DNA of 64,000 nucleotides, from positions 248,001 through 312,000 of IMG/VR virus record IMGVR_UViG_3300023184_000025. One strand, 5' to 3'. The notes below the pieces were generated by a model, which worked only from the letters and a program-made list of their open reading frames with translations, had not been told where the DNA came from and did no database searches. How positions within the stretch are numbered: the first letter of the stretch is position 1; each line of letters begins with the position of its first letter. This document shows, in pieces, positions 2 through 40,894 of the stretch. A program made the translations under genes and the position numbers.

Positions 2-559
2 AACACTGATGGTCGAGATGAGAGTCTTGTTGAGTTTTGCTTTGAACCCAATTATTTTGCCATGTACGATTGTTACAGTACCACCTATCCAAACGGAACG
101 TCGTTTCAGGCCTGGCGAGCAGGATTTAGAGAAGGCGTCAAGATGTGCCTGGACAAAGGTCATAAACCATCAGTGGCTGAATTTAGAGATCGTGTACATA
201 AACGTAATTTTGATCATCTTACAATTTGGCATAATGTAGGAACCGATGCTGAAAACGGCGCCTGGGCCATTGCTGGCAGTAGAATGGGTACTTACATGAC
301 TATGCTAACTGATTGGGATTATCGGCTAGTTCAAAATTTTGATGCGTTAGCAACCTTGTGGGATACTGTTAAAGACCACACTCCGGAAATTGTGTTTGAT
401 AGAATTGCCAACGAATTAAATCAACAATTAGATTTACCTGTTATTGTTTTGGGTCGAGAAGAAAGTGAATTTTTTAAACATCATTACCTAAGCAATTGGC
501 ACAATCGCGGCGTTATGGTACGAGAAATTGATGTTATTCGAAGTCAAGAAGGCTGGTAA
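2..559 (+). CDS. C-terminal part of a phage glycosyltransferase-like protein (5' truncated by window edge); paralog of 19799-21430 C-terminus
   Basis: Frame is open from base 2; FQAWRAGFREGVKM resembles YQTWRTAFREVSKL in 19799-21430. Confidence 0.55.
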   Translation, partial: NTDGRDESLVEFCFEPNYFAMYDCYSTTYPNGTSFQAWRAGFREGVKMCLDKGHKPSVAEFRDRVHKRNFDHLTIWHNVGTDAENGAWAIAGSRMGTYMTMLTDWDYRLVQNFDALATLWDTVKDHTPEIVFDRIANELNQQLDLPVIVLGREESEFFKHHYLSNWHNRGVMVREIDVIRSQEGW

Positions 560-1244
560 TAGCGTTGGCCAGGTCTTGATGTGCTTGCGGCCCGTAGTGA
601 AAGTTATCTCTTGCTTTATCTGATTGAGTTAATGGCGGGATTACATTATCTCCTAATACATCGTAGTCAACTGCCTGGTCATGCCAATTTGGGATGAAGC
701 TATGTACTAATTTGATATTTTTAGCTAACAAACATATTTTTTTAAAATTTGTAAACCAATTACTAAAGTTTTCTTCTGAAGAATAAAATGGCTCGCACTC
801 TGTCCGTTCGTCATCAAACCAGGCAGATTCAGGTCGCTCTCTGCGATGACTAAATGTATAATGTACAATTATAGCACTAGGGTGAAACAATGTTAGTAAC
901 TGTTGAAGTTTTCTTGCAATCCAGTCATTACTTGCTCCGTTTAAGCTAAAATTTAAAACTTGATGTGATAGATGTTGCTCAATGAGATCAGCATACCGTT
1001 TGTTATTATTAACACCTAGTCCTAGAGTAAAACTATCACCTAGTACCAGTATTGCATTAGGATTAAAGGTTGAAACATTGTGTGTTCTAAATCCTATTTC
1101 GTTAAATTGATAAGTTACAGATGGATGTTGCTTGAATACTTGACGATTTGGGCAATGTTCTAAACTGTCTAATCCTAGCTCTGTAGCATGCATGCCAGTA
1201 TAAAAAGGAATATTGATATATTGTTTGACAAGATCTGCATACAT
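534..1244 (-). CDS. SGNH/GDSL-like hydrolase/acyltransferase
   Basis: YQFNEIGFR, LGDSFT, GASN and C-terminal ARDNFH motifs; likely start MYADL at 1244. Confidence 0.65.
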   Translation of the reverse strand: MYADLVKQYINIPFYTGMHATELGLDSLEHCPNRQVFKQHPSVTYQFNEIGFRTHNVSTFNPNAILVLGDSFTLGLGVNNNKRYADLIEQHLSHQVLNFSLNGASNDWIARKLQQLLTLFHPSAIIVHYTFSHRRERPESAWFDDERTECEPFYSSEENFSNWFTNFKKICLLAKNIKLVHSFIPNWHDQAVDYDVLGDNVIPPLTQSDKARDNFHYGPQAHQDLANAITSLLDFE

Positions 1245-1258
1245 AAATATTTTTCTCA

Positions 1259-2350
1259 ATGAACGTTCTAATACTTACCCCCGATCGAGTAGGCTCTACT
1301 TTATTACAAAGATTGATAACAATCTACGCTAATGTCAATGAAAATTATGAGCCATTGACTATTAATTTACATGAGTTAACTAATGGCTTAGTGAGATACG
1401 ACCATGAAACATTTAATAGAAAAGTACTGGGCAAAAAAGCTGATGGTTGGGGATACCATCAAACTCTGCAGACTATTTCAGGATTAATTGACAATTGCGG
1501 CCATGATGTAGTAAGCCGTTTAGCTCACTATCATTTAAAAAATCGTAAAGATAACACAAGTGATCAATTGGCATTTTACAAATATCTCAATGAAAATTTT
1601 TATATTATTGCGGCCCGTCGAGAAAATTTATTTGAGCATGCAATGAGCTGGTGCATTGCGGTTGAGTCTAAAAAATTAAATGTATACTCGTTTGATGAAA
1701 AGTTTAAGACCTACAATGATATATTAAAAAATCCAGTTACCGTACAGGCTGAAATGATCAAGAAGTACCTAACACAGTACAGAGAATACATGGACTGGGT
1801 AGACAACCATTTTCAAGTCAACAGTTATTTTGAGTACGAACGTAATTTACCCAATATTGAAGAGTACATATTTAATTTAAGAGTTTTTCAAAAATATACA
1901 AAACCTCTTACCTGGGCCGACCGTTGGGACATATCCTGGAAGGATTGGAATCAAATGCATTACCTGTTAAGCTTAGTGCCGTTTGATCATAAATTTTCTC
2001 CTGACGAAACAAAATTTATGTCTGACAATATTGACTTATACACTCGGTGTAGGATAGACATACAAGACCTACAAGACCTAGGAGTGCTTGTGTCGGGAGT
2101 ACCTATCAAATTGCACACATTGCATCAGAAAACACAGTTAATTGCCAATGCTCCTGAATGTTTATTACACTATAATAATTGGGCACAACAAACCGCTGTG
2201 CCATATGCATTACCTTATACACCTGAACACATGACTCAAGTTGCAAAATTAGAACATGGTTTTTGGACTCAAGACAGTGGTAATCAACTGTCATACAACG
2301 ATATTAGTCACCAAAAATTACTTAACAGTGATCTAAAAGGATTTGAATGA
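1259..2350 (+). CDS. Sulfotransferase-like P-loop protein
   Basis: N-terminal TPDRVGSTLL, LHE, RRENLFEHAMSW resemble PAPS-binding motifs. Confidence 0.5.
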   Translation: MNVLILTPDRVGSTLLQRLITIYANVNENYEPLTINLHELTNGLVRYDHETFNRKVLGKKADGWGYHQTLQTISGLIDNCGHDVVSRLAHYHLKNRKDNTSDQLAFYKYLNENFYIIAARRENLFEHAMSWCIAVESKKLNVYSFDEKFKTYNDILKNPVTVQAEMIKKYLTQYREYMDWVDNHFQVNSYFEYERNLPNIEEYIFNLRVFQKYTKPLTWADRWDISWKDWNQMHYLLSLVPFDHKFSPDETKFMSDNIDLYTRCRIDIQDLQDLGVLVSGVPIKLHTLHQKTQLIANAPECLLHYNNWAQQTAVPYALPYTPEHMTQVAKLEHGFWTQDSGNQLSYNDISHQKLLNSDLKGFE

Positions 2351-4296
2351 TTATTGCATTTTATCCTGGAGCAGGCGGCAACAGGTATGCTCTAGCCCTA
2401 CAACAATCAATGGTGTTTGAGTCAAATCAAACGTATGATCATTTACTGAAGTCTCAAGATTTTGTCTATAGGTATTTAGAATCTGATACCATTGGTTTGA
2501 AAGATCAGGAATTAATACTCACACATTGTTTAAATGTTCCATTATTAAAATTGCATTTTCCTAATCAGACTGACATAGTAGTGATCATATCGGATCTTGA
2601 ATCTAGTTTAAAACGTGAATTTTATCTCGAAGACCAACACAGAGATAAAGACATGACAGACAAGGTTGAACATGCATTAGCACACATTAGCTTCCATTGT
2701 AGGTACTATAAACAATATCCAGTAAACTTAACCGGCGCTAGTTTAGTAATTGACATCAATAAAGACAACAGTGATTTTACCACAATGATGCGTAACGAAA
2801 TTAACAATATAGTTTGTGAAGAATACAACCAGGCCAGTAAACTTTATAATAAGTTACAACCACAAGATAGAGCAGACTTACCCGGGGATAAGATTGTTGA
2901 CGGTTTTAAATCTAAGTTTCTTGACGATGCTGAAAAAATGAGATTAGAACTAGATAAGTTTAGTCCTAGTTTGTGCTTGGCCAAATGGAAACAGGTTAGC
3001 CTGCACTTAGCAACAGGAATGAATAACAGTTGTTATCACCCGCCCTTGCATAAAATACCCATAGAAGAAATTGGACGTAATCCCGGAGCATTACACAATA
3101 CTCCATACAAGAAAGAACAACGTAAAATGATGCTCAACGGCGAGAGGCCCGCCGAATGTAGTTATTGTTGGACCATGGAAGATCTGGGCAAACTCAGTGA
3201 TAGACACTATCGCAGTGGGGAACCATGGGCCGCGATGGATTTTGGAAAAATTGTAAGTTCGGAGTGGAATGATGATTTTGTACCTAGTTATGTTGAAGTT
3301 AATTTTAATCATGCTTGTAATCTATCTTGTAGCTATTGCAGTCCACAATTTAGTAGTACTTGGCAGGCTGAAGTGGAACGCTCAGGTGGCTATCCTACTA
3401 CTACTATCCATAACGATCCTAGTTACTTCACTGGCAATAATCGACCTATACCCGCTAGTCATGAAAATCCTTATGTAGATGCTTTTTGGAAATGGTGGCC
3501 TACACTTTATCCGCAATTAAAACATTTCCGAATGACCGGTGGCGAGCCTTTGATGGATAAAAATACCTACAAGGTATTTGATTATGTATTAGCACTACCT
3601 AACCCTGAGTTGCACCTAAATGTAACCAGCAATTTCAGCGTAGAGCCGCAGTTATGGAACAAGTATTTTGATTATGTTAAAAAATTGTGCGACACTAACA
3701 TTGAACATTTTATGCAGTATGTTAGTTTAGATTCGGGTGTTTCTGAACATGCCGAATACATTCGCCATGGATTAAATTTTCATAGATTAAAAAGTAGAGT
3801 TAATCATTTCTTACACGATATTCCTAGCCGTAACAGTCTTACATTTATTATCACAATGAATAACCTCAGTGTGTTAGGACTAAAAAAACAACTTGAGTGG
3901 ATATTAGAACTACGAAAACAACATAGCAAGACATATCAACGTGTATGGTTTGACACACCATTACTCAGGCAGCCCACGTGGCAGAGCCTACAAATAATGC
4001 CTCCAGCGTATGCAGGCATACTTGAACGTACTGCTGACTGGATGGAACTTAATTTAGAAAACCCTAACGACCCATTTCACGGATTTAAAGACTACGAAGT
4101 ACAACGCCTTCGAAGAGACATTGCCTGGATGAAAGATGGACAGAAGTTGCAACAAGATTATGTTAATAAAAATCGTGCTGATTTCTATAGATTTTTTAAC
4201 GAACACGACGCTCGACGAGGAACAGATTTCTTAAAGACATTTCCAGAAATGTCAGATTGGTGGAAAGAATGCGAGTACCATGCTAGACAAACGTAA
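2347..4296 (+). CDS. Radical SAM enzyme (N-terminal Twitch/SPASM-like Cys cluster) fused to an extra N-terminal ~190-aa domain
   Basis: CNLSCSYC, TGGEP; upstream CLAKW..SCYH..CSYC; N-terminus IAFYPGAGGN. Confidence 0.85.
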   Translation: MIIAFYPGAGGNRYALALQQSMVFESNQTYDHLLKSQDFVYRYLESDTIGLKDQELILTHCLNVPLLKLHFPNQTDIVVIISDLESSLKREFYLEDQHRDKDMTDKVEHALAHISFHCRYYKQYPVNLTGASLVIDINKDNSDFTTMMRNEINNIVCEEYNQASKLYNKLQPQDRADLPGDKIVDGFKSKFLDDAEKMRLELDKFSPSLCLAKWKQVSLHLATGMNNSCYHPPLHKIPIEEIGRNPGALHNTPYKKEQRKMMLNGERPAECSYCWTMEDLGKLSDRHYRSGEPWAAMDFGKIVSSEWNDDFVPSYVEVNFNHACNLSCSYCSPQFSSTWQAEVERSGGYPTTTIHNDPSYFTGNNRPIPASHENPYVDAFWKWWPTLYPQLKHFRMTGGEPLMDKNTYKVFDYVLALPNPELHLNVTSNFSVEPQLWNKYFDYVKKLCDTNIEHFMQYVSLDSGVSEHAEYIRHGLNFHRLKSRVNHFLHDIPSRNSLTFIITMNNLSVLGLKKQLEWILELRKQHSKTYQRVWFDTPLLRQPTWQSLQIMPPAYAGILERTADWMELNLENPNDPFHGFKDYEVQRLRRDIAWMKDGQKLQQDYVNKNRADFYRFFNEHDARRGTDFLKTFPEMSDWWKECEYHARQT

Positions 4297-5422
4297 ACTT
4301 ATTCTAGATACATTTTGCGAAGTCTACGATCAACTACTACCCTGGGAAGATGAGTCTTTTTATGATTTTAGTAATCACACTATTGTTCCGGGTGCAATTT
4401 ATATTATAGGTCGAACACAATTTAATTTGAATAAAGAGAGAATTCGTGAGTTAGTTGAATCTGACACTATACGTGTTGTATTAAGCAATCCAGCTGAAGG
4501 CAGCGAAACGTTAAAAGCACATTGTGAGAGTGTGCATAACATTGCCGATCTTGTTGTGCAAGGGCGTATTTTATTAATTGGTGGTGGAGACATGGAGCCA
4601 GACTGGCCGTGTTTAGTCTATGATAGTTTCTTGCCCAAGATACATGACTATAAACAAAACCTAATAGAGATTAATCGGTCAGAGGCCTTGTACTCCGCGC
4701 CCAACAAGCCTTTTAAATTTTTGTTTTTAAATGGCCGCTTGAGAGGGCATAGAAAATTCCTAATAGAAAAACTTGATTTAATGGGACTGTTAGATCAAAG
4801 TCTGTGGACTAGTCTAGAATCTAGGCAAAGTATGTACTCAAATCTATGTGTGCCATTTAATGGACAGGATCTGATGTTTACTTTGAGAGAACCACACCTG
4901 TTGCCACCTAAATACGAAGTTGATCGTTATTGCAACAACATTGATCTAGTGCCCAAATTAGGCTTTATTAAACACAAGTTGTTTGATCAAGAATGGGGAG
5001 AAATCTATCTCAAAGCAGAACCCTATATTGATACGTATTTTAGTCTAGTTTCTGAAACAGTCTGTGATTATCCGTATAGTTTTAGAACTGAAAAAATTTG
5101 GAAACCTGTGGCCATTGGGCACCCGTGGATAGCGGCAGCCAATCGAGGATACTATCGAGACATGCGCAATCTGGGATTTCAAACATTTTCACATGTGATT
5201 GATGAAAGTTTTGATGAAATTGATAATACACAGGATAGACTCACACGTATTACACAAATAGTTGAAGATTTGTGTAAACAAGATCTTGATGAATTCCTTA
5301 AATCGTGTTATAATGTATGTAAATACAATCAACAACATCTGCTTGAAATGCGCCAAACTGTGCGTAAAGAATTTCCTAGACGATTCCTGCAATTTATTAA
5401 ACAAAGTCACTTTGATGAATGA
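4280..5422 (+). CDS. Glycosyltransferase-like protein (GT-B/GT10-like C-terminus)
   Basis: SLVSET..FRTEKIWKPVAIGHPW..GFQTF..DESFD; paralog family in window. Confidence 0.55.
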   Translation: MLDKRKLILDTFCEVYDQLLPWEDESFYDFSNHTIVPGAIYIIGRTQFNLNKERIRELVESDTIRVVLSNPAEGSETLKAHCESVHNIADLVVQGRILLIGGGDMEPDWPCLVYDSFLPKIHDYKQNLIEINRSEALYSAPNKPFKFLFLNGRLRGHRKFLIEKLDLMGLLDQSLWTSLESRQSMYSNLCVPFNGQDLMFTLREPHLLPPKYEVDRYCNNIDLVPKLGFIKHKLFDQEWGEIYLKAEPYIDTYFSLVSETVCDYPYSFRTEKIWKPVAIGHPWIAAANRGYYRDMRNLGFQTFSHVIDESFDEIDNTQDRLTRITQIVEDLCKQDLDEFLKSCYNVCKYNQQHLLEMRQTVRKEFPRRFLQFIKQSHFDE

Positions 5423-6758
5423 TTTAGAATTCCGCCAACAAATATTAGATACCAAAAGTTCTAGCTTCTGTGCGGCCAAATGGTACAATGCTACTATATG
5501 GCTAGGATCAGGCCAAACGACTAGCTGTCATCATCCGCCGGCACACGCTATTGATGTAGATGATATTAAACGCAACCCATCAGCGTTACATAACACACAG
5601 AGAAAAAAAGCCGATAGAGAAATGATGCAGAAAGGTGAGCGTCCTAGCGGTTGTGAATACTGCTGGAAAATTGAAGACATGGGCCGTGATGCTATTTCGG
5701 ACCGTGTGTACAAATCTCGAATATATCCTATAGAGGCATTACATGAAGCTTTCAATACCCCTGTCCATGAAGACGTTAATCTCAAAACTCTCGAAATTGC
5801 ATTCGATCGCACTTGCCAATTTGCTTGTAGTTATTGTAACCCTGCTTTCAGTAGCACATGGGTTAATGACATCAAAAAGCACGGCGCCTATACCGGCCTG
5901 GTGTCTGATGGGCGCAACCACTTTACTCATACTCACGATAGTTCTCAACTATACACGTTTAATCAAGCCAATCCTTACGTGGATGCGTTCTTTAAATGGT
6001 GGGAAACAGACCTACACCAAACACTACAAGAACTAAGAATCACTGGTGGCGAACCGTTGATGTCGGGTTATACTTGGAAATTGATTGAATGGTTCAAAAC
6101 AAACCAAGGTAAATCAACAACCAAGTTAGCTATCAACAGCAATCTGGGATTTGAACCTAACAAGCTTCAAGAGTTTATTGATGCTATACACACACTTCCG
6201 CATGTGGATCTATACACCAGCATGGAAGCAGTAGACACACAGGCCGAATATATTCGTGACGGACTTGACTATCAGCAATGGATCAACAATGTGCAATTGT
6301 TACTGGAGTCTGACTCCGTAAAGGCTGTGCATGTGATGTGTACCATTAACGCATTGTGCCTGGATAGTTTGCCTCGCTTGTTGTATCAATTGTTAGAATT
6401 CAAACAGATGTACGGCAGAGAGCGTGTGAATTTTACCTTGAATATACTGCGCTTCCCCAGCTTTCAATCACCATTGGTGCTGCCAGACCACCTACGTGCC
6501 CAGTGCAAGAACCAACTGATTGATTTCTTTGCACGTAATATCAACAACCCATATCTTCAAGAGCACGAAATCAATCATATACAACGATTGATTGACTATT
6601 TAGATATAGTTAAAACGCCGCACTCGGACACATTTGAAATGCCGGTGTTGCACAATGATTTCAAACAATTCTATTCGCAGTACGATGTTCGTAGATCGAA
6701 AGACTTTGTCAACACATTCCCCAATTTTAAAGAATGGTATGACTCAATACAAGTATAA
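5415..6758 (+). CDS. Radical SAM enzyme with N-terminal auxiliary Cys cluster
   Basis: CQFACSYC, TGGEP; CAAKW..SCHH..CEYC; start MNDLEF at 5415. Confidence 0.85.
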   Translation: MNDLEFRQQILDTKSSSFCAAKWYNATIWLGSGQTTSCHHPPAHAIDVDDIKRNPSALHNTQRKKADREMMQKGERPSGCEYCWKIEDMGRDAISDRVYKSRIYPIEALHEAFNTPVHEDVNLKTLEIAFDRTCQFACSYCNPAFSSTWVNDIKKHGAYTGLVSDGRNHFTHTHDSSQLYTFNQANPYVDAFFKWWETDLHQTLQELRITGGEPLMSGYTWKLIEWFKTNQGKSTTKLAINSNLGFEPNKLQEFIDAIHTLPHVDLYTSMEAVDTQAEYIRDGLDYQQWINNVQLLLESDSVKAVHVMCTINALCLDSLPRLLYQLLEFKQMYGRERVNFTLNILRFPSFQSPLVLPDHLRAQCKNQLIDFFARNINNPYLQEHEINHIQRLIDYLDIVKTPHSDTFEMPVLHNDFKQFYSQYDVRRSKDFVNTFPNFKEWYDSIQV

Positions 6759-8004
6759 CAGTACAGACCTAGTGCGTCCTACAGAACTCACCGAGCGTGA
6801 GCGTTTTCTATTAGAAGATTCTAAAACGTTCTGCATCTATCCCTGGATACATTTACACGCTTATCCCACCGGAGAAGCATATCCTTGCTGTCATGCTGAA
6901 ATGAAGCCCGGTGTTGTGGGTAATTGTCGCACAAACACACTAGAAGAAATATGGCGCGACAAACCCATGCAGAAACTACGTGCAGACATGTTGAGCGAAA
7001 CTCCACACGCCGCCTGCACACGCTGTTATGAACAAGAAGAGTCTGGATTCTTTAGTGGCCGCAAAAGCGCCAACAAGCATCACGGACATCAGATAAAGAA
7101 ACTGGAAGAAAATCCCTTTGAAATGACTTACTGGGACATTCGCTTTAGCAATTTGTGCAACTTAAAGTGCAGATCATGTGGACACATCTTTAGTTCACAG
7201 TGGTATCAAGACCAGGCCAAACTGGCCGGCGGTGATTGGAAAGATCGTAATACAGTACTAAACTATGCTGGCCGCACAGAAACAGACATGTGGACACAAT
7301 TAGAGCCTCATTTAGATTATGTAGAACAAATCTATTTTGCTGGTGGCGAGCCACTACTAATGGAAGAACACTACCGAATTCTAGATGAACTAGTGCGTCG
7401 CGGCCGCTTTGATGTACGTTTAATCTACAACACAAATTTTACACACACCGACCTTAAAGGTAATAGTGTATTTGAATACTGGAAACAATTTAATTCGGTG
7501 GCAGTTGGCGCAAGTCTAGATGCAATGGGACCACGTGCGGAGTACATACGCAAAGGCACTGATTGGGCAGTGGTAGAACAAAATCGCAGAGACATGATTG
7601 AGATCTGTCCAGGTGTAGATTTTTATATCAGTCCCACATTGAGTATTATGAATGCCATGCATTTAACACAATTCCATCGTGCATGGGTACAACAAGGCCT
7701 ACTAAAACCACAGGATCTTAATGTAAACATTTTACAAGATCCTGTGCATTATAGGATTGATATTGCCCCTGTTGAATACAAAGAGCGACTCACAGCACAG
7801 TATTATGATCATATCGAGTGGCTGACACAAGTAGGTGATCCGTTGGGTCGTGCCACACAAGGTTTTGAAAGTGCAATCACCTTTATGAATGCCATAGATA
7901 ACACACAGTTAATAGATCAATTTTGGCGTAAGACGCATGATTTGGACGGTATTAGAAACGAAAACATCTTGGATATCATCCCGGAACTAACAGCATTAAA
8001 ATGA
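6739..8004 (+). CDS. Radical SAM/SPASM(Twitch) enzyme
   Basis: CIYPW..PCC..CTRC then CNLKCRSC, AGGEP; start MTQYK at 6739. Confidence 0.88.
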   Translation: MTQYKYNSTDLVRPTELTERERFLLEDSKTFCIYPWIHLHAYPTGEAYPCCHAEMKPGVVGNCRTNTLEEIWRDKPMQKLRADMLSETPHAACTRCYEQEESGFFSGRKSANKHHGHQIKKLEENPFEMTYWDIRFSNLCNLKCRSCGHIFSSQWYQDQAKLAGGDWKDRNTVLNYAGRTETDMWTQLEPHLDYVEQIYFAGGEPLLMEEHYRILDELVRRGRFDVRLIYNTNFTHTDLKGNSVFEYWKQFNSVAVGASLDAMGPRAEYIRKGTDWAVVEQNRRDMIEICPGVDFYISPTLSIMNAMHLTQFHRAWVQQGLLKPQDLNVNILQDPVHYRIDIAPVEYKERLTAQYYDHIEWLTQVGDPLGRATQGFESAITFMNAIDNTQLIDQFWRKTHDLDGIRNENILDIIPELTALK

Positions 8005-9206
8005 ATTTACCACAGGATAAATTTTGTGTACTGCCTTGGATCAGCTTAGAAGCTAGTCCCATTGGTACTGTACGCCCTTGCTGTCTTGCTGAAGATGAGA
8101 TAGTTGATAATGCTGGTAATAAATTTGAATTAACCAAAGCTGACTTCGTTGAGATAAGAAATTCAGATTACATGAAAAATCTTAGACAGCAATTCCTAAC
8201 AGGACAAAAACCCGATACCTGTAAGAAGTGTTGGAATGAAGAAGATTCAGGTAGAACAAGTAAACGAATGCACACTATTGATCGATTAAAACATATTGTT
8301 GGCAATCAGTCCTGGAGCGAAGATGAAAAACCAATGATGTTCTTGGATTTAAAACTAGGAAATATCTGTAATCTTAAATGCCGTATATGTGGTTCGTGGT
8401 CATCAAGTTCGTATGCAACAGAAGAAATGATGGCTGTACCACACCAAGATCGTAAAAAAACATTTGCCTATCAGATGCTACGTGCTGGTAGTTGGCCAAG
8501 AGAAAATAAACAATTTTGGCAACAAATTGATCAATGCCTATCTGACATACACTATATAGAATTCACCGGTGGCGAACCTTTTATGATCAGCGAACATTTT
8601 GATATGTTACAAGGAATTGTAGACAGAGGAATTGCTGGACAAGTAGAGATACATTACAATACAAACGGAACCATAGTTCCTGAACGTGCGCCTGACATTT
8701 GGCGACACTTTAAAACAGTTGAAGTTGCATTTAGCATAGATGATATAGGACCACGATTTGAATACCAACGAATGAATGCCAACTGGAAAGACGTTAACAA
8801 AAATATTTCAGAATTTAAACGATTACAATCTACAATGCCAAACCTACAGTTACAATGCTGTAGTACTGTTAATGTTTTTAATGTACTATATCTTGAAGAG
8901 TTGGATGCATGGCACAAATTGGCTAATTTTGATTTTGTCTATTGGAATATGTTGCACGAAGCATATTATTTTAGCATAGGATCATTGCCCGAACTATCAA
9001 AACAATCTGTTAAACAAAAATTAGAAAGTACAGCAATCTCTGGCAGTACAAAACAGGAAGTTGAAAAAATTATTCAATTCATGATGCAAGGAACAAGTCT
9101 TGATGGTTCTTTGCTACGTGAAAAAATTAAAGAAATAGATCTACGAAGAAACCAGGATCTAAATCAACATCATTCAGAATTGTCTGACATAATTGACTAT
9201 GAATAA
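8001..9206 (+). CDS. Radical SAM/SPASM(Twitch) enzyme
   Basis: CVLPW..PCC..CKKC, CNLKCRIC, TGGEP. Confidence 0.88.
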   Translation: MNLPQDKFCVLPWISLEASPIGTVRPCCLAEDEIVDNAGNKFELTKADFVEIRNSDYMKNLRQQFLTGQKPDTCKKCWNEEDSGRTSKRMHTIDRLKHIVGNQSWSEDEKPMMFLDLKLGNICNLKCRICGSWSSSSYATEEMMAVPHQDRKKTFAYQMLRAGSWPRENKQFWQQIDQCLSDIHYIEFTGGEPFMISEHFDMLQGIVDRGIAGQVEIHYNTNGTIVPERAPDIWRHFKTVEVAFSIDDIGPRFEYQRMNANWKDVNKNISEFKRLQSTMPNLQLQCCSTVNVFNVLYLEELDAWHKLANFDFVYWNMLHEAYYFSIGSLPELSKQSVKQKLESTAISGSTKQEVEKIIQFMMQGTSLDGSLLREKIKEIDLRRNQDLNQHHSELSDIIDYE

Positions 9207-10497
9207 GCCCGAATCTTTGTGTATGGCACCATGGGTGCATACGTATTTAAGCCCACAAACAGAGCGCAGAATGTGCTGTGCTAGCCGTGAGCCTGCACAA
9301 AATTTTCAACAGTACATTGACACATCAGCAGGCACAGGAAAGTATATTCCACTCACACTAGATCAACACTGGAATAGTGATCATATGAAAAGTGTTAGAC
9401 AACGTATGATGGCAGGAGAAACTTTACAAGAATGTGACGTTTGTAATAGTAAACTGTTAAATACTGATGTCTATAGAACATATTTCTGGCACCTATTCAA
9501 ACATCGTTATGAAGAGGCCATGGAACAAACACAGCCCGACGGATCCACAACCATGAAACCAATAAGTTGGGATTATAGGTTTAGCAATCTTTGCAATTTC
9601 AAATGCCGTATGTGTGGGGATATGTTGTCTAGTAGTTGGGAAAGCGAAGAACGCCAACACAATCTTATTGACTATTCAGATCCACGAAATAACTGGATGA
9701 AGCCAGCAGTAAGAACAGAAATTAGCAAATTCCAAGACACACAGATTGAACAAGAGTTTGCACAGGCAGTTGAAGAACATCGTGTGGAAGAAGTTTATTG
9801 GGTCGGTGGAGAACCGTTGATGTATGAACAACATTGGCGGTATATGAAACGTATTATTGAATTAAATGATGGAGGCAGAGTATATGCTAGATATAACACT
9901 AATCTTAGCCGTGTTGATTATCGTGGCCGTAATCTCTATAGAGATATATTGGACCATATCAGGGACTGGCAGATATGCGCCAGCCTTGACGGAACAGGAC
10001 CCACGGGAGAATACATCCGCACAGGCTTGGAATATTCCACCTTCCTAAAAAACTTTAAACAGGGAGTTGAGATACAAAAACATCGCAGACAAATGCGAAT
10101 TGATTTTACACTCACATTGCCTGGACTATTCGAAGTAGACAATATACAGCAGTTATCAACCGAACTTGGTGTTGATATATTAGCCAAAGTAATTTTTAGT
10201 TTTAGCCCGGATATTATTATGAGTCCATTGGCATTGCCTCGTGAGTTACTAGACAGTACAGTAGATCGTCTAACAACTAACTTACCTCATGGTGCGTTGA
10301 AGGATGTGTTACTACAATTAAAATCACGACCAACTTTTGCAGAACAGTGGCCGGATACCTGGGAAAAAGGTCTTGCAAGAGGAAAGTTCAGAATGTTACA
10401 ATTAGAATCTATTAGAAATGATAAATTTGGGCTAGACCAAATACTACAACAGGACAATGAAATATATGGCTGGTGGAAAAATATTAGAACAGATTAA
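9193..10497 (+). CDS. Radical SAM/SPASM(Twitch) enzyme
   Basis: CMAPW..MCC..CDVC, CNFKCRMC, VGGEP. Confidence 0.88.
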   Translation: MTMNKPESLCMAPWVHTYLSPQTERRMCCASREPAQNFQQYIDTSAGTGKYIPLTLDQHWNSDHMKSVRQRMMAGETLQECDVCNSKLLNTDVYRTYFWHLFKHRYEEAMEQTQPDGSTTMKPISWDYRFSNLCNFKCRMCGDMLSSSWESEERQHNLIDYSDPRNNWMKPAVRTEISKFQDTQIEQEFAQAVEEHRVEEVYWVGGEPLMYEQHWRYMKRIIELNDGGRVYARYNTNLSRVDYRGRNLYRDILDHIRDWQICASLDGTGPTGEYIRTGLEYSTFLKNFKQGVEIQKHRRQMRIDFTLTLPGLFEVDNIQQLSTELGVDILAKVIFSFSPDIIMSPLALPRELLDSTVDRLTTNLPHGALKDVLLQLKSRPTFAEQWPDTWEKGLARGKFRMLQLESIRNDKFGLDQILQQDNEIYGWWKNIRTD

Positions 10498-11554
10498 AGT
10501 TGAACTTAAAAATAGAAACTTTGATAAACTTCACTCAGTTTATATTGACGTCTATGATAATTCGTTATCTCGTAAATGGTTAAATGCACTAAACGGGTTA
10601 TTAACAAACAACTCTCATTTAGAAAAAAATTTTTGTTTCTTAGGATTTACTCAAAGTCAGCGCAATGGGTGGTACATTCTTGAACAAGTAAACAAATCAA
10701 TAGATGCAATTAACCAGGCAAATATTGGATACGTCATTGATGATTATTTTACAATGGAAAACACTATCACCAATGATCCTGTAGGGTCAAGAACAGTTGG
10801 TAGGAATATGATTCATGAACGTTTAAATTGGTTGCATCGTTACTTTGAAGACCTGCAAGGTGTAAGCGGTAGCATGTCGGTTTATTTTAATCACGCCAGT
10901 GCTGACATACGTTGGCACATAAGACAATTAAATTTACTTTGTCATGAGTTTGAAACATGGGCATTAAGTTATCGTAAAGAAATAGAAGCACCCGAGTGGC
11001 AAAGACCCAGCCAACTAATGTGTTGGTTAAACGCACCAAGATTCACTCTTGACGAAAACGACTATGATTTATTTGGAGTTGAAACAATAAACCGCAGTCT
11101 TGGAGGAGTATTTGTTGGAGTCAACAAGGCAATTGGAAAACATCATTGGGAAGTATTCATGGATGAAGGCCGTGACAGTCGAGTTAGTGAATTAATCACT
11201 ACTTCTATGCGCAGTCAGACTGAAGCCGCTGGAGATTTTGATATTGAGTGGGCAAATAATCCAGGTAACCATAGCTGGCAACAAATTAAACTAGCTGAAT
11301 TTAAAGAGTGGTTACTGGTCAATGGGTTTGACCCCGATGATAAACTATTAACCATTGGACATCCTCAAGTGGGACAAGTAGATTTAAAACGTAGTTTTAA
11401 CACAGAAGATTACCTAACTATTTGGAATCAATTAAATAATAGTCTAGACGTATACAGCGTGAGTACTAGCAATAATTGTGCCGTATACGATTATCACTGG
11501 TCTGATTCAGACTTTATAGACCGTCAAATAAAAATAATTAATCGAAAGAACTAA
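10457..11554 (+). CDS. Hypothetical protein (LNWLHRYFE / LNLLCHEFE, possible metal-binding helices)
   Basis: Long ORF coupled within the operon; two HxxE-like motifs. Confidence 0.6.
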   Translation: MKYMAGGKILEQIKVELKNRNFDKLHSVYIDVYDNSLSRKWLNALNGLLTNNSHLEKNFCFLGFTQSQRNGWYILEQVNKSIDAINQANIGYVIDDYFTMENTITNDPVGSRTVGRNMIHERLNWLHRYFEDLQGVSGSMSVYFNHASADIRWHIRQLNLLCHEFETWALSYRKEIEAPEWQRPSQLMCWLNAPRFTLDENDYDLFGVETINRSLGGVFVGVNKAIGKHHWEVFMDEGRDSRVSELITTSMRSQTEAAGDFDIEWANNPGNHSWQQIKLAEFKEWLLVNGFDPDDKLLTIGHPQVGQVDLKRSFNTEDYLTIWNQLNNSLDVYSVSTSNNCAVYDYHWSDSDFIDRQIKIINRKN

Positions 11555-11555: not shown

Positions 11556-11657
11556 ATGAACTGGCTAAAAAATTTAATCAAACGAATTCGCATGGACATT
11601 CGTTATCGTAAAAAGCTAAACGAATTGCGTAACAAAAAGCCTTTTATATACTGGTAA
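11556..11657 (+). CDS. 33-aa basic peptide MNWLKNLIKRIRMDIRYRKKLNELRNKKPFIYW (copy A; not in ORF track)
   Basis: Translated by hand; TAATG overlap with next gene; paralog at 12175. Confidence 0.8.
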   Translation: MNWLKNLIKRIRMDIRYRKKLNELRNKKPFIYW

Positions 11658-12178
11658 TGAAACAGCAAATCGAACAAGACATTTGGCAATGGATAACCGA
11701 ATACATAGAAGTCAATCACGAATTCTATGCTCACAAGTTTCCGCCTTGCCCTTATGCACGTGGCGCAAGATTAAAAGGCAGTTTGGATGTTGTTGCCTGG
11801 ACTTCCGGTAATACTAGAATCTTTATTAATACACAAACTGCCGATTTGCTACTGTCTGACAAGACTGTGCGTGTAATGGTATTCCCTCCCAGTTTACGAT
11901 GGAATTGGTTAACACGCTGGCACATTGCAAATCTAAATAAAACTATGATTCCCCAGGACTACTATATACAATATGGCGGAGCTGTGGGAACTACTAGTAG
12001 ATACCCTGGATTGCCTGGTGCGTATGTAATTGTAATTATTAATCAATTGAGCGATGTACTAGCAGGGCACACCGCATTGAAATCTACTCCGTATTATCGC
12101 AACTGGAGCAACACACACTATCACAATGTTGTGGAGCGCAGACAAGATATGTATAATCGTTATAAGGATATAAAATGA
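11657..12178 (+). CDS. Hypothetical protein (PPCPYA motif)
   Basis: Translationally coupled to both flanking peptides. Confidence 0.65.
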   Translation: MKQQIEQDIWQWITEYIEVNHEFYAHKFPPCPYARGARLKGSLDVVAWTSGNTRIFINTQTADLLLSDKTVRVMVFPPSLRWNWLTRWHIANLNKTMIPQDYYIQYGGAVGTTSRYPGLPGAYVIVIINQLSDVLAGHTALKSTPYYRNWSNTHYHNVVERRQDMYNRYKDIK

Positions 12179-12276
12179 ACTGGTTAAAAAACTTAATCAA
12201 TAGAATTAAACTTGAAATAAGATATAGAAAAAAACTCAAAGAGTTGCGTAAACGAGATCCATTTATCTACAAATGA
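12175..12276 (+). CDS. 33-aa basic peptide MNWLKNLINRIKLEIRYRKKLKELRKRDPFIYK (copy B; not in ORF track)
   Basis: ATGA overlaps with both neighbours; paralog of 11556. Confidence 0.85.
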   Translation: MNWLKNLINRIKLEIRYRKKLKELRKRDPFIYK

Positions 12277-13769
12277 AAAAATATTTAGGTATAAGTGCTG
12301 GATTCCATGATGCCGCTGTGTCTGTGATCACGGGTCACGGCGATATTTTATTTGCTGGTCACGCCGAACGCTACAGTAAAAACAAGCATGACCCTCATAT
12401 CAATCAAGACCTAATGGCCGAGGCATTGTTGCATGGTGAGCCGGATGTTGTTGCTTTTTACGAAAAACCTTGGCTTAAAAAGCTGAGAAACTTTTATGCA
12501 GGACAATATAATGAAGCATTGGATTTTACCGATATTACTGTTTGTAAGTATTTGCATAAACATGTACCTATATCTTTTCATAAGAAGCCACTATTTTTAC
12601 ATGCTGGACATCATTTGTCCCATGCTGCCGCAGGATTCCAAACCAGCCCCTTTACCAAGGCCACCGTTGTCGTTATAGATGCTATAGGAGAATGGGATAC
12701 TATTAGCATATGGGCCGCAACATATAATAGCAGTAATCAAGCAACATACAAAAAACTATGGAGTCAGAAGTATCCGCACAGTATTGGATTGTTTTATAGT
12801 GCAATTACTAAACGGATTGGACTACATCCAATGGATGAAGAATATATTACAATGGGTATGTCCGCCTGGGGCCGCTCTGTGTGGTATAATAAAATGAATT
12901 ATGATCTTGTTGCAGACCTTGATAAAATAGAATTTAAAAATAATTTACATCTTGGTCTGGATTCAACGTATTTAGAAGCTGGAACTAACGAAGACATTGC
13001 CGCATCAGCACAAGAATTAGTTGAAGAGTTAATTGGAAATGTAATGAAACTTGCCAGATCTTTTAACTGGAGCAATAATCTTGTTTATATGGGCGGTGTT
13101 GCTCTTAACTGTTTGGCAAATCGTAACCTAGGAGAATATTTTGAAAACATTTGGATTATGCCTAACCCTGGTGATGCTGGTAGTAGTCTCGGCGCTGCCG
13201 CTTATGCCTATCGTGGTAAAATCAATTGGAATAACGCTTATCTTGGCAGTGATATTAGCGGACCTTATCCTGTTAATGATATTATTGATGAGTTACTTTC
13301 TAGACAAATTGTCGGCGTGGCTTCCGGAAGAGCAGAGTTTGGTCCTAGAGCACTTGGCAACCGCAGTCTACTGGCAGACCCAAGAGGTTCCGAAATCAAG
13401 GACAAAGTAAATGAAATTAAACGTAGACAAAAGTTCAGACCATTTGCCCCAGTTATGTTGGAGGAACATGTTGATATGTATTTTGACATGCCTTGCGGTT
13501 TCAGTAACAGTAGGTATATGCAAGTCATCAGTCGCTGTAGGCATCCTGAGTTATTTCCTGCTATCATTCATCGGGATGGGACTAGTCGTGTTCAAACAGT
13601 ACCGCGAGATGGCTCAGGAATTAGACAGCTACTAGAAGCTTGGTATGCAAAGACTGGATGCCCGATGTTGCTTAATACCAGCTTAAATGTTAGAGGAGAG
13701 CCCATGGTAAATGACAGAGTAGACGCTGATCGTTTTGAATACCTTTATGGAGTTAAAGTATGCAGTTGA
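12273..13769 (+). CDS. O-carbamoyltransferase (CmcH/NodU/TobZ family)
   Basis: HDAA, AERY, HHLSHAA, GGVALNC, EFGPRALGNRS, RPFAP, LNTSLN. Confidence 0.95.
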   Translation: MKKYLGISAGFHDAAVSVITGHGDILFAGHAERYSKNKHDPHINQDLMAEALLHGEPDVVAFYEKPWLKKLRNFYAGQYNEALDFTDITVCKYLHKHVPISFHKKPLFLHAGHHLSHAAAGFQTSPFTKATVVVIDAIGEWDTISIWAATYNSSNQATYKKLWSQKYPHSIGLFYSAITKRIGLHPMDEEYITMGMSAWGRSVWYNKMNYDLVADLDKIEFKNNLHLGLDSTYLEAGTNEDIAASAQELVEELIGNVMKLARSFNWSNNLVYMGGVALNCLANRNLGEYFENIWIMPNPGDAGSSLGAAAYAYRGKINWNNAYLGSDISGPYPVNDIIDELLSRQIVGVASGRAEFGPRALGNRSLLADPRGSEIKDKVNEIKRRQKFRPFAPVMLEEHVDMYFDMPCGFSNSRYMQVISRCRHPELFPAIIHRDGTSRVQTVPRDGSGIRQLLEAWYAKTGCPMLLNTSLNVRGEPMVNDRVDADRFEYLYGVKVCS

Positions 13770-32078: not shown

Positions 32079-32104
32079 TTAGGCTCCTTGTTTAACTATA
32101 CTGT

Positions 32105-32133
32105 ATTATAGCAATTATTGATTTATTGGTCAA
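32105..32133 (-). promoter_or_regulatory. Sigma70-type promoter TTGACC-17-TATAAT
   Basis: Direct match, 17-bp spacer. Confidence 0.75.
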
Positions 32134-32143
32134 CTACAGATTG

Positions 32144-32748: not shown

Positions 32749-32791
32749 AGCCCTATGCCCTCATCCAAGAAGTTGAACGGACTCCAAACAC

Positions 32792-37715: not shown

Positions 37716-37885
37716 GTAATATTTCCTTAAAAAGTTGAATTGTAATGCTTGTGGAAGAATTCCACTTACAGTAGGCGTTCTGTTATAGTATAACAGTAAA
37801 GACATCACTATGTCAAGTGTCAATTTGATCTGACGTCGGCCCTTGCCGGCGTTGCAAAATTATTTATAAATTGAAATAACTTGGT

Positions 37886-39947: not shown

Positions 39948-39949
39948 TG

Positions 39950-40855: not shown

Positions 40856-40894
40856 ACAAGTATTTATACCTGTCGAACCAAAGTCCAGGATTAG

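What the first reader, a model, noticed from the sequence alone, without database searches (positions are those of the whole stretch)
2347..10497. Tandem array of five radical SAM paralogs with an N-terminal auxiliary Fe-S motif
Seen: each has C-x(~19)-C[C/H/Y]-x(~40)-CxxC ahead of the CxxxCxxC core, with a sixth copy at 27660. Established: SPASM/Twitch domains are normally C-terminal, and Twitch enzymes such as BtrN oxidise sugar or cyclitol hydroxyls. There are two subtypes (SC[Y/H]HPP and CC), and 2347 has an extra N-terminal domain. Inference: a diversified set of sugar dehydrogenases/epimerases, or peptide maturases.
Basis: partly seen in the sequence, partly recalled or inferred. Interest (0 to 1): 0.6.

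Follow-up and report, generated by a model that had tools for sequence, protein, structure and literature searches.

The report
Phage radical-SAM array in sugar island
A 345-kb freshwater T4-like phage carries eight old paralogs of an already catalogued but never studied radical SAM family whose extra iron-sulfur (Twitch) domain sits at the front, interleaved with a new glycosyltransferase family and amino-sugar tailoring genes, so they most likely tailor sugars of a phage-made glycan rather than peptides.

Summary
Five + strand genes (2347-4296, 5415-6758, 6739-8004, 8001-9206, 9199-10497), a sixth at 27660-28856 (-) and two more elsewhere in the genome match NCBIfam NF033640, "N_Twi_rSAM", full length at 203-392 bits (cut-off 170). 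All eight keep C-x17/18-C-x24-52-CxxC ahead of CxxxCxxC. The N-terminal Twitch architecture is therefore already a curated family, not a new one. I found no paper on its chemistry.

The window lies in a 345,154-bp T4-like jumbo phage from lake metagenomes. The five-gene array is kept in 76-77 of 77 related viral loci. Each paralog forms its own orthogroup, in two deep subtypes.

The gene that interrupts the array (4280-5422) has a GT-B glycosyltransferase fold, with no Pfam hit for any of 95 members scanned, and has eight paralogs in the genome. Neighbours are an amidinotransferase, an O-carbamoyltransferase, two DegT aminotransferases, a DesII-like radical SAM and an NDP-sugar epimerase/dehydratase.

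Best reading: sugar or glycan C-H oxidising tailoring enzymes, with the reaction itself inferred. Novelty: new members of a known family in an undescribed phage context.

The parts
2347..4296 (+). rSAM copy 1 (649 aa, subtype A, SCYHPP). Residues 1-200 (2347-2946) are an extra domain with a P-loop kinase / sulfotransferase-like lead. Residues 206-638 are N_Twi_rSAM.
   Evidence: NF033640 at 315 bits. The Atlas lead for residues 1-200 scores 0.90 to viral sulfotransferase clusters, with TM about 0.5 to cytidylate/uridine kinases. The N-domain is a separate gene in L076, L057, L048 and others.
4280..5422 (+). GT-B fold glycosyltransferase of an unnamed family (380 aa), inserted between rSAM copies 1 and 2.
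   Evidence: AF2 model with pLDDT 96.0 and pTM 0.92. All 50 best VIA matches are GT-B glycosyltransferases over residues 1-380, at Z 13.6 to 9.2, including T4 beta- and alpha-glucosyltransferases and alpha1,3-fucosyltransferases. None of the 95 members scanned has a glycosyltransferase Pfam hit. The family has eight paralogs in the genome.
5415..6758 (+). rSAM copy 2 (447 aa from ATG 5415; the frame is open from 5262), subtype A, SCHHPP.
   Evidence: NF033640 at 307 bits. A homolog is present in 77 of 77 related loci, median 69% identity.
6739..8004 (+). rSAM copy 3 (421 aa), subtype B. It is the most conserved copy and the one modelled.
   Evidence: NF033640 at 391.5 bits and Pfam SPASM at 47 bits on the N-terminal region. 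AF2 model with pLDDT 95.1. More than 7,900 homologs, the top 120 at 82-95% identity.
8001..9206 (+). rSAM copy 4 (401 aa), subtype B. Its ATG overlaps the stop of copy 3.
   Evidence: NF033640 at 338.6 bits and Pfam SPASM at 28.1 bits on residues 9-78.
9199..10497 (+). rSAM copy 5 (432 aa), subtype B.
   Evidence: NF033640 at 291 bits. It has its own orthogroup with 100% SH-aLRT support.
10457..11554 (+). Conserved partner of unknown fold (365 aa). It overlaps the end of copy 5 by 41 nt.
   Evidence: A homolog is present in 67 of 77 loci. More than 6,500 homologs, all unnamed and without Pfam domains. No PDB or Pfam hit.
11556..11657 (+). 33-aa basic peptide gene, copy 1 (ends PFIYW). Its stop touches the ATG of the 173-aa ORF at 11657-12178.
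   Evidence: 75% identical to the copy at 12175-12276. Found only in this phage and its near-identical relative L008; L044 has a more divergent second copy.
12175..12276 (+). 33-aa basic peptide gene, copy 2 (ends RKRDPFIYK). Its stop overlaps the ATG of the carbamoyltransferase (AAATGA).
   Evidence: Found in over 70 related loci with a nearly invariant C-terminal half. Codon-position diversity is 6.5 / 3.6 / 13.5, the signature of a translated gene. Kept in the distant relatives L093 and L094.
12273..13769 (+). O-carbamoyltransferase (NodU/CmcH/TobZ type).
   Evidence: Pfam Carbam_trans_N and Carbam_trans_C. Nearest solved structures are NovN at 2e-45, GdmN and TobZ. Present in 63 of 77 loci.
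16471..17532 (-). Amidinotransferase (AGAT / StrB1 type).
   Evidence: phmmer against the PDB gives AGAT at 6.8e-12, inosamine-phosphate amidinotransferase StrB1 at 1e-10, and SxtG. The alignment includes the C-terminal catalytic-Cys segment. 64% identical in L093.
17528..19800 (-). Two further paralogs of the GT-B family (17528-18736 and 18688-19800).
   Evidence: Iterated HMM search among the fetched loci and the window. Genome-wide scores are 247 and 244 bits.
21423..25888 (-). Deoxy-amino-sugar block: DegT aminotransferase, DesII-like radical SAM, DegT aminotransferase, NDP-sugar epimerase/4,6-dehydratase.
   Evidence: Pfam DegT twice and Epimerase/GDP_Man_Dehyd. TIGR04426 rSAM_desII at 341 bits, full length, below the 450 equivalog cut-off. 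For the DegT at 23890, the nearest solved structures are Gln:scyllo-inositol transaminase at 4e-41 and QdtB.
27660..28856 (-). rSAM copy 6 (398 aa), subtype B. Its ATG overlaps the stop of ThyX (28849-29526).
   Evidence: NF033640 at 290.6 bits. The ThyX-to-rSAM order is kept in L093 at 63% identity.
534..1259 (-). GDSL/SGNH-type hydrolase (variable accessory gene).
   Evidence: Pfam Lipase_GDSL at 23.6 bits, exactly at the cut-off. Present in 7 of 77 loci.

Best explanation
The five genes, with a sixth at 27660 and two more elsewhere in the genome, are ancient, non-redundant paralogs of the N_Twi_rSAM family. Each has an N-terminal Twitch domain with four conserved Cys, expected to hold a fully ligated auxiliary [4Fe-4S] cluster. 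This is followed by a partial TIM-barrel radical SAM core with the CxxxCxxC cluster.

They belong to a conserved island of a T4-like freshwater jumbo phage. Eight paralogs of a new GT-B glycosyltransferase family are interleaved with or lie near the rSAMs. Next to them sit a StrB1/AGAT-type amidinotransferase, a NovN/TobZ-type O-carbamoyltransferase, sugar aminotransferases, a DesII-like rSAM and an NDP-sugar epimerase/dehydratase.

Inferred mechanism: the glycosyltransferases assemble a multi-sugar product from host nucleotide sugars, since the phage has no nucleotidyltransferase. Each rSAM abstracts a hydrogen from one particular sugar (or cyclitol) position and passes the second electron to the Twitch cluster. 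This is a BtrN/anSME-style two-electron oxidation to a ketone. The ketone is then aminated, and the amines and hydroxyls are amidinated and carbamoylated. The product would most likely decorate the virion or the infected cell surface.

Shown here: family membership, Cys conservation, fold, gene context and conservation. Inferred: cluster binding, sugar substrate, oxidation chemistry and the destination of the product.
For: Family and architecture:
- NF033640 matches full length and above cut-off in eight copies.
- Pfam SPASM sits on the N-terminal region and there are seven invariant Cys.
- The AF2 model has pLDDT 95.1. Its core matches BlsE (Z 14.1), anSME (13.7), viperin (13.0), SuiB (13.0), SkfB (12.9) and MoaA (12.3).

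Conservation:
- Array copies 1-5 are present in 76-77 of 77 related viral loci.
- Each paralog has its own orthogroup with 100% support, in two deep subtypes.

Gene context:
- The interleaved gene family has a GT-B glycosyltransferase fold. The genome holds eight GT-B and eight N_Twi copies.
- Neighbours are an amidinotransferase, an O-carbamoyltransferase, DegT, DesII-like and epimerase genes.
- Distant viral relatives L093 and L094 keep rSAM + carbamoyltransferase + DegT + epimerase.
- Unrelated members sit among GT2/GT4 glycosyltransferases, DegT and other rSAMs: an Elusimicrobiota MAG (L088/L089) and the L090 contig.
- The fusion of copy 1 to a P-loop kinase/sulfotransferase-like domain points to a small-molecule substrate.

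Chemistry:
- Invariant Arg108 and Arg271 and near-invariant Asp261, with no conserved non-cluster Cys, fit an anionic (nucleotide-sugar-like) substrate. They also fit oxidation better than Cys-dependent epimerisation.
- A four-Cys Twitch cluster as electron acceptor is the role proposed for BtrN (PMC9012708).
Against: - No reaction, substrate or metal content was measured.
- Structural matches cover only the generic rSAM core, and the best ones include both sugar/nucleotide enzymes and peptide maturases.
- I could not read model coordinates, so the position of the Twitch site relative to the active site is unverified.
- TPR repeats fused to several family members would suit protein or peptide substrates.
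- Recognisable GT2/GT1 genes are few and no nucleotidyltransferase is present, so the sugar donor supply is assumed to come from the host.
- Five to eight dedicated oxidases for one glycan is more than any known pathway uses.
- The acceptor (virion protein, lipid, DNA or free product) is unknown.
Confidence: 0.5

Rival explanations
1. The rSAMs are peptide or protein maturases. They would install cross-links, epimerisations or other radical modifications on the conserved 33-aa basic peptides (11556-11657, 12175-12276) or on a virion protein, as most SPASM/Twitch enzymes in RiPP clusters do.
For: - The 33-aa ORFs are real translated genes in the same gene string. Their C-terminal half (LEIRYRKKLKELRKRDPFIYK) is nearly invariant in over 70 loci and in the distant relatives L093 and L094.
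- Structural neighbours include SuiB, SkfB, CteB and anSME.
- TPR repeats are fused to several family members.
Against: - No RRE/PqqD domain is present in any of the six copies in the window or in the ten fusion proteins scanned.
- The peptide gene lies about 1-1.7 kb downstream of the array, after an unrelated 365-aa gene.
- Its stop overlaps the ATG of the carbamoyltransferase in 55 loci, which ties it to that enzyme rather than to the rSAMs.
- tblastn found no such peptide in the non-phage loci L088-L091; L092 was not searched.
- One 33-aa peptide is a poor match for five to eight distinct, individually conserved enzymes.
- The neighbours are sugar enzymes, not proteases or exporters.
Confidence: 0.2
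2. The island makes a diffusible aminoglycoside-like (aminocyclitol or amino-sugar) small molecule during infection, for example to suppress competitors or to manipulate the host. The rSAMs would act as BtrN-like cyclitol or sugar dehydrogenases on free intermediates.
For: - The enzyme set mirrors aminoglycoside logic. It has a StrB1-type amidinotransferase, a TobZ/NovN-type carbamoyltransferase, a transaminase closest to Gln:scyllo-inositol transaminase and glycosyltransferases.
- This phage lineage also has a benzoate-CoA-ligase-family enzyme and a Trp-halogenase-family enzyme.
- A T4-like cyanophage with aminotransferase + rSAM + amidinotransferase genes was described as carrying 'antibiotic synthesis genes' (PMC12801897).
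Against: - No inositol-phosphate synthase, 2-deoxy-scyllo-inosose synthase, resistance gene or exporter was recognised among the genes scanned.
- The ligase and halogenase are absent from all 77 more distant relatives, so they are not core.
- Eight GT-B paralogs suggest a polymer or a protein-linked glycan rather than a pseudo-trisaccharide.
Confidence: 0.15
3. The rSAMs and GT-B enzymes hypermodify phage DNA or nucleotides, for example by glycosylating and further tailoring modified bases as a defence against restriction.
For: - The GT-B model matches T4 beta- and alpha-glucosyltransferases at Z 11.9 and 11.5.
- rSAM copy 6 is translationally coupled to ThyX, and this order is kept in L093.
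- Core structural neighbours include nucleotide-using rSAMs: BlsE, viperin and MoaA.
Against: - No ThyA-type dCMP/dUMP hydroxymethylase is present in the 99%-complete genome.
- T4 glucosyltransferases are only two of fifty equally scored GT-B matches.
- Amidino-, carbamoyl- and amino-transferases of the sugar or natural-product type are not known parts of DNA modification pathways (my knowledge).
Confidence: 0.1

Closest known systems
NCBIfam NF033640, N_Twi_rSAM (twitch domain-containing radical SAM protein)
   Same: All eight copies match the whole 398-position model above its curated cut-off. They share the defining order, a Twitch-type 4-Cys domain followed by the CxxxCxxC radical SAM core.
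   Different: The family is a curated sequence model without a characterised member. Full-text search for the family name or accession found no paper about it. The multi-copy phage array, the two subtypes and the pairing with GT-B genes are not part of the family description as far as I can tell.
BtrN (butirosin 2-deoxy-scyllo-inosamine dehydrogenase), the archetypal Twitch radical SAM
   Same: One auxiliary cluster site with four Cys ligands (PMC9012708). The Cys spacing is C-x17/18-C-x~40-CxxC, which I recall as BtrN-like. The context is amino-sugar or cyclitol genes with a partner aminotransferase.
   Different: In BtrN the Twitch domain is C-terminal; here it is N-terminal. No sequence match to BtrN appeared in a PDB profile search at E up to 1. 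The substrate here is unknown.
BlsE (cytosylglucuronate decarboxylase) and anSME, the closest solved structures
   Same: The radical SAM core superposes at Z 14.1 (219 residues, rmsd 3.5) and Z 13.7 (223 residues, rmsd 3.8). BlsE acts on a nucleoside-sugar.
   Different: Only residues about 130-390 align. Identity is 15-19%. Their auxiliary domains follow the core, and anSME has two auxiliary clusters.
DesI / DesII / DesV deoxy-amino-sugar route (desosamine)
   Same: The window has the same gene set side by side: a DegT aminotransferase, a DesII-like rSAM (341 bits to TIGR04426), a second DegT and an NDP-sugar dehydratase/epimerase.
   Different: The DesII-like gene is below the equivalog cut-off (450). 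This block concerns a different rSAM family from the finding and was not found in the more distant relatives within the DNA fetched.
Sugar and 'antibiotic synthesis' genes of T4-like cyanophage S-SCSM2R (PMC12801897)
   Same: A T4-like phage carrying an amidinotransferase, a DegT-type aminotransferase and a radical SAM gene. The authors state that the role is unclear.
   Different: Its amidinotransferase is only 29.5% identical. It sits with KdsA/KdsB, GT24 and 2OG-Fe(II) oxygenases, not with N_Twi rSAM arrays. A protein search with ORF3 (tblastn) against 50,697 phage records did not find it.

Membership tests
N_Twi_rSAM (NF033640) | Full-length match to the curated HMM above its cut-off of 170 bits | tested here: met
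   Scores are 291-392 bits for the five array genes. The sixth copy scores 290.6, and the two copies outside the window score 234.6 and 203.2.
N_Twi_rSAM (NF033640) | Twitch-type Cys motif placed N-terminal to the CxxxCxxC radical SAM motif | tested here: met
   Four invariant Cys lie before the invariant CxxxCxxC in all eight copies. Pfam SPASM covers model positions 1-67 of 67 on the N-terminal region of ORF3 and ORF4, above the gathering score. SPASM lies N-terminal of Radical_SAM in every fusion protein where Pfam detected both domains.
N_Twi_rSAM (NF033640) | Two [4Fe-4S] clusters actually bound | not testable with these tools
   This needs Fe/S analysis, EPR or Mossbauer spectroscopy of reconstituted protein and Cys variants. 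Model coordinates could not be read here.
Full SPASM domain enzymes (two auxiliary clusters) | Seven or eight conserved Cys, including CX2CX5CX3C | tested here: not met
   Only four Cys are conserved in the auxiliary domain. No Cys is conserved after the CxxC or in the C-terminal region.
BtrN-type Twitch dehydrogenases | Twitch domain C-terminal to the core, and sequence kinship to BtrN | tested here: not met
   The domain order is reversed. A profile search of the PDB at E up to 1 lists BlsE, viperin, SkfB, MoaA and YydG but not BtrN.
BtrN-type Twitch dehydrogenases | Two-electron oxidation of a sugar or cyclitol hydroxyl | not testable with these tools
   Inferred only from the four-Cys auxiliary site and from the aminotransferase-rich context.
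RiPP radical SAM maturases | RiPP recognition element (PqqD-like) or another leader-binding domain | tested here: not met
   No PqqD/RRE family hit appears in Pfam or NCBIfam scans of the six copies in the window or of ten fusion proteins.
RiPP radical SAM maturases | Precursor peptide gene next to the maturase | tested here: inconclusive
   Conserved 33-aa ORFs exist 1-1.7 kb downstream, but each is coupled to the gene after it (pep2 to the carbamoyltransferase). None was found in the non-phage loci L088-L091. The binding prediction could not be run.
GT-B glycosyltransferases (for the interleaved gene 4280-5422) | Two-Rossmann-domain GT-B fold over the whole protein | tested here: met
   AF2 model with pLDDT 96. 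All 50 top VIA matches are GT-B glycosyltransferases at Z 13.6-9.2, spanning residues 1-380.
DesII (TIGR04426) (for the neighbour 22511-23893) | Equivalog-level HMM score of 450 bits or more | tested here: not met
   341 bits, full length. It is filed as DesII-like only.

The most novel reading that the evidence does not exclude
N-Twitch radical SAMs are a large, unstudied class of glycan C-H oxidising or rearranging enzymes. In this phage clade, serial glycosyltransferase + rSAM + aminotransferase / amidinotransferase / carbamoyltransferase steps build a cationic, aminoglycoside-like glycan. The virus would display it on the virion or release it. That would be a virus-encoded, radical-SAM-driven glycan pathway with no described counterpart.
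Probability: 0.25. Interest if true: 0.8.

Novelty: new member of a known kind. Interest (0 to 1): 0.5.

Why it matters
The family is very large. A profile of the eight copies finds 7,563 clusters (at 50% identity) with E below 1e-30, and 32,352 with E below 1e-3, among 1.84 billion representatives. I found no member with known chemistry.

This phage clade is abundant in lakes: 223 viral contigs were found, and sequencing runs from 14 studies hold the DNA. It offers an unusually clean test bed. Eight diverged paralogs each have clear orthologs, they sit next to their probable partner glycosyltransferases and tailoring enzymes, and the operon is compact enough to express.

Assigning a reaction would annotate thousands of genes. 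It would also show what a T4-like phage does with a dozen oxygen-sensitive radical SAM enzymes and an amidino/carbamoyl amino-sugar pathway.

Tried and rejected
- Megablast of the array against 50,697 phage records gave no match. Megablast of 40000-60000 hit only tRNA genes and a GroEL stretch.
- A protein search with ORF3 (tblastn) found only Vibrio phages K566/K567 (21% identity) and RsoM2USA (26%).
The family's spread in cellular genomes is therefore known only from two contexts, an Elusimicrobiota MAG and the L090 contig.
- A PDB profile search with the N-terminal domain alone (A3) gave nothing meaningful; the best hit was RicF at E 1.1. The Twitch assignment therefore rests on Pfam SPASM and NCBIfam, not on a solved structure.
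- The PDB profile search with the GT family (A4) returned TAL-effector and ubiquitin repeats built from many sub-threshold pieces. I rejected these as spurious.
- The promoter/terminator scan was not above shuffled controls.
- phmmer against the PDB gave nothing for 10457-11554, 19799-21430 and 1259-2350.
- The 'moraphage' jumbo-phage paper (PMC12619734) does not mention radical SAM and predicts Bacteroidota hosts for most genomes, so I took it for a different lineage.
No binding claim is made.
- Read laying was not used, because all listed runs are DNA contigs. No alternative genetic code was needed.

Full report
**What is there**

The region 1259-11554 is one string of + strand genes whose starts and stops overlap. 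The genes are:
- 1259-2350, unknown function.
- 2347-4296.
- 4280-5422.
- 5415-6758 (frame open from 5262).
- 6739-8004 (frame open from 6610).
- 8001-9206.
- 9199-10497.
- 10457-11554.

Five of them match the NCBIfam model NF033640, 'N_Twi_rSAM, twitch domain-containing radical SAM protein', over essentially all of its 398 positions. E-values run from 1e-86 to 5e-117 and scores from 291 to 392 bits, against a curated cut-off of 170. Pfam places its SPASM model (positions 1-67 of 67) on the N-terminal part of ORF3 and ORF4, above the gathering score, and places Radical_SAM behind it.

The genome holds two more copies above the cut-off, at 67.4 kb and 118.3 kb. It also has one weak relative and three other radical SAM genes.

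**The motif**

I aligned the eight copies (A1). They are only 18-28% identical to ORF3, yet seven Cys are invariant. The exact spacing is C-x17/18-C-x24-52-C-x2-C-x43-60-C-x3-C-x2-C. Also invariant are GGEP (the SAM-binding strand), R108, S152, N233, S259, Y269 and R271.

In a wider alignment of 89 family members the picture is the same, and no other Cys is conserved (A2). There are four auxiliary Cys and no CX2CX5CX3C. That makes this a Twitch (one cluster), not a full SPASM domain.

The literature describes SPASM and Twitch domains as C-terminal extensions, and describes BtrN's auxiliary cluster as ligated by four Cys (PMC9012708). The N-terminal placement is genuinely unusual among studied enzymes, but it is already the defining trait of a curated family. 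A search of the ESM Atlas by shape returns a cluster automatically named 'putative twitch domain-containing radical SAM protein', at TM 0.96.

**Structure**

An AlphaFold2 model of ORF3, built with 89 sequences, has mean pLDDT 95.1 and pTM 0.92. Solved structures align only to the core, residues about 130-390:

| Structure | Z | Aligned residues | rmsd |
|---|---|---|---|
| BlsE | 14.1 | 219 | 3.5 |
| anSME | 13.7 | 223 | 3.8 |
| viperin | 13.0 | 204 | 3.9 |
| SuiB | 13.0 | 224 | 5.0 |
| SkfB | 12.9 | 211 | 3.4 |
| MoaA | 12.3 | 224 | 4.4 |

These rows are tied within about one to two Z units and mix sugar/nucleotide enzymes with peptide maturases. The fold alone therefore does not name a substrate.

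The N-terminal domain is modelled as a short strand pair, then helices that carry the CxxC. I could not read coordinates, so the distance between the cluster sites is untested. A PDB profile search with the N-terminal domain alone found nothing.

**Where the window comes from**

The window is bases 248001-312000 of a 345,154-bp virus record that CheckV rates 99% complete.
- The record has a T4-type major capsid protein (Pfam Gp23, 333 bits).
- The window holds 28 tRNA genes and a tmRNA that matches Rfam's betaproteobacterial tmRNA model at 120 bits.
- The DNA is held by freshwater, lake and river metagenome runs from 14 studies.
- No cultured phage is close.

This looks like an uncultured T4-like jumbo phage of lakes, probably with a betaproteobacterial host. 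The host is an inference.

**Conservation**

ORF3 has more than 7,900 homologs, and the best 120 are 82-95% identical. IMG/VR holds 223 viral contigs with an ortholog.

Among the 80 best loci, an HMM built from A1 finds the same five-copy array at the same spacing in nearly all of them. Some loci have one to three additional, more divergent copies. By BLAST, copies 1-5 have homologs in 76-77 of the 77 loci that are not near-identical to the window.

A quick maximum-likelihood tree of 71 domains shows several things (the careful search did not finish):
- Each window paralog has its own orthogroup with 100% SH-aLRT support.
- Two deep subtypes are split by a branch with 99% support. Subtype A is ORF1 and ORF2, with the SC[Y/H]HPP motif. 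Subtype B is ORF3-6 and the two outlying copies.
- Members from the unclassified L090 contig (whose triple-fused protein falls with subtype A), a marine contig and an Elusimicrobiota MAG fall inside these subtypes.

The paralogs are therefore old and individually maintained, which argues for distinct jobs.

The family as a whole is very large: 7,563 clusters at 50% identity with E below 1e-30. Many proteins carry two or three fused copies.

**The interrupting gene and the neighbourhood**

The 380-aa gene at 4280-5422 has no Pfam, NCBIfam or PHROG hit. An iterated search shows it belongs to a family with 235 members in the fetched loci, interleaved with the rSAM genes. The family has eight paralogs in this genome.

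Its AF2 model has pLDDT 96.0. It matches only GT-B glycosyltransferases, over its whole length:
- a glucosyltransferase at Z 13.6;
- a chlorella-virus glycosyltransferase at 12.1;
- T4 beta- and alpha-glucosyltransferases at 11.9 and 11.5;
- alpha1,3-fucosyltransferases at 11.4-10.9.

The other neighbours are:
- 12273-13769, an O-carbamoyltransferase. Pfam assigns both domains, and the nearest solved structures are NovN, GdmN and TobZ.
- 16471-17532 (-), an amidinotransferase. The nearest solved structures are AGAT at 6.8e-12 and StrB1 at 1e-10, and the alignment includes the catalytic-Cys segment. Pfam missed this gene.
- 21423-25888 (-), a block of DegT aminotransferase, DesII-like rSAM (341 bits, below the 450 equivalog cut-off), a second DegT (nearest solved: Gln:scyllo-inositol transaminase and QdtB) and an NDP-sugar epimerase/dehydratase.
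- 534-1259 (-), a borderline GDSL hydrolase.

The distant viral relatives L093 and L094 have rSAMs only 25-65% identical to the window's, and L094 has eight copies in a row. They keep the module of rSAMs + carbamoyltransferase + DegT + epimerase. L093 also keeps the amidinotransferase and two GT-B paralogs.

Two contexts outside this viral clade place family members among GT2 and GT4 glycosyltransferases, DegT, B12-rSAMs, GDSL hydrolases and TPR proteins. The phage itself has no sugar nucleotidyltransferase and only one clear GT2. It also has no ThyA-type hydroxymethylase.

**The extra domain of ORF1**

Residues 1-200 are a separate gene of 183-234 aa just upstream of copy 1 in several relatives. 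They are fused to copy 1 in six loci. Atlas leads point to viral sulfotransferase clusters (score 0.90) and to P-loop nucleoside-kinase folds (TM about 0.5). This is a lead, not an assignment.

**The 33-aa peptides**

The second has an ortholog in over 70 related loci, and its C-terminal half (LEIRYRKKLKELRKRDPFIYK) is almost invariant.

Diversity across the three codon positions is 6.5 / 3.6 / 13.5, which is the signature of a translated gene. In 55 loci its stop overlaps the carbamoyltransferase ATG as AAATGA. The pairing survives in L093, and in L094 as a 38-aa version ending KNDPFIYR.

The first copy precedes the 173-aa ORF in the same way. It occurs only in this phage and its near-identical relative L008; L044 has a more divergent second copy.

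These are real small genes of unknown role. They could be a partner or substrate of the carbamoyltransferase, a translational leader, or an rSAM substrate.

**Interpretation**

The best-supported reading is that these are sugar or glycan tailoring enzymes of a phage-encoded glycan pathway. The specific chemistry I favour is hydrogen abstraction followed by electron transfer to the four-Cys Twitch cluster, giving a keto-sugar that the aminotransferases can use. That rests on:
- analogy with BtrN and anSME;
- the absence of a conserved non-cluster Cys that an epimerase would need as hydrogen donor;
- invariant Arg and Asp residues that would suit an anionic nucleotide-sugar and a catalytic base.

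None of this is shown. I put it at about 0.5.

The rivals are:
- peptide or protein maturation, 0.2;
- a free aminoglycoside-like metabolite, 0.15;
- DNA or nucleotide modification, 0.1.

The closest published notice is a T4-like cyanophage whose aminotransferase, rSAM and amidinotransferase genes were called 'antibiotic synthesis genes' of unclear role (PMC12801897). Its locus is only loosely similar.

**Verdict**

These are new members of a known but uncharacterised family, in an undescribed and widely conserved phage context that makes the family's function testable.

Noticed in passing
window 11556-11657 and 12175-12276 (+); L093:16128-16226 (-); L094:14457-14573 (+): Two 33-aa, very basic peptide genes. 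The second is conserved in over 70 related phage loci with a nearly invariant C-terminal half (RYRKKLKELRKRDPFIYK). Its stop codon overlaps the ATG of the carbamoyltransferase. It could be a small subunit, a substrate or a translational leader.
   Followed up: partly
window 39925-40269 (-) and 45608-59992 (-): A phage-borne tmRNA that matches Rfam's betaproteobacterial (two-piece) tmRNA model at 120 bits, with tag peptide ANDEQFALAA, plus 28 tRNA genes. This suggests a betaproteobacterial host.
   Followed up: partly
window 4280-5419, 17528-18736, 18688-19800, 43951-45123, 54991-56076; genome 88786-90171, 120786-121892, 146649-147608: A GT-B glycosyltransferase family without a Pfam model has eight paralogs in the genome, the same number as the N-Twitch rSAMs. 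One outlying rSAM (genome 118271-119350) lies 1.4 kb from one of them. Whether they work as pairs is untested.
   Followed up: partly
window 13760-16469 (+): A benzoate-CoA-ligase-family adenylating enzyme (362 bits to TIGR02262) and a tryptophan-halogenase-family flavoenzyme (306 bits). They are present only in this phage and its near-identical relatives (L008-L010) and absent from 77 other related loci. This looks like a recent insertion of natural-product-type genes.
   Followed up: partly
window 27660-29526 (-): ThyX is translationally coupled to rSAM copy 6 (8-nt overlap). The same order is kept in the distant relative L093. The reason is unknown.
   Followed up: partly
window 25890-27071 (-): A Na+/H+ exchanger family membrane protein (Pfam, 77 bits) encoded by the phage between the sugar block and rSAM copy 6. 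No homolog appears in the related DNA fetched, though most loci do not extend this far.
   Followed up: no
window 30786-33892 (-) and 36780-37823 (-): A DUF2201 metallopeptidase/VWA protein with a MoxR-type AAA ATPase nearby, and a TctC-family (tripartite tricarboxylate receptor) protein. A TctC-like gene also sits inside the rSAM array in relative L006.
   Followed up: no
genome 193317-194306 (-), outside the window: The T4-type major capsid protein match (Gp23, 333 bits) contains one in-frame TAA within the matched stretch. This could be two ORFs, an intron or intein, or an assembly error.
   Followed up: no
P0121-P0148 (representative proteins); P0128, P0240, P0247: Many family members are fusions of two or three N-Twitch rSAM units (800-1,400 aa). 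Several carry TPR repeats at either end, which hints at protein-bound or scaffolded substrates in some lineages.
   Followed up: partly
window 56123-57742 (-): A 539-aa ORF whose DNA has an 85.5% identical 69-nt stretch in a Vibrio phage gene annotated as the 60-kDa chaperonin. It is probably a phage GroEL. No family scan was run.
   Followed up: no
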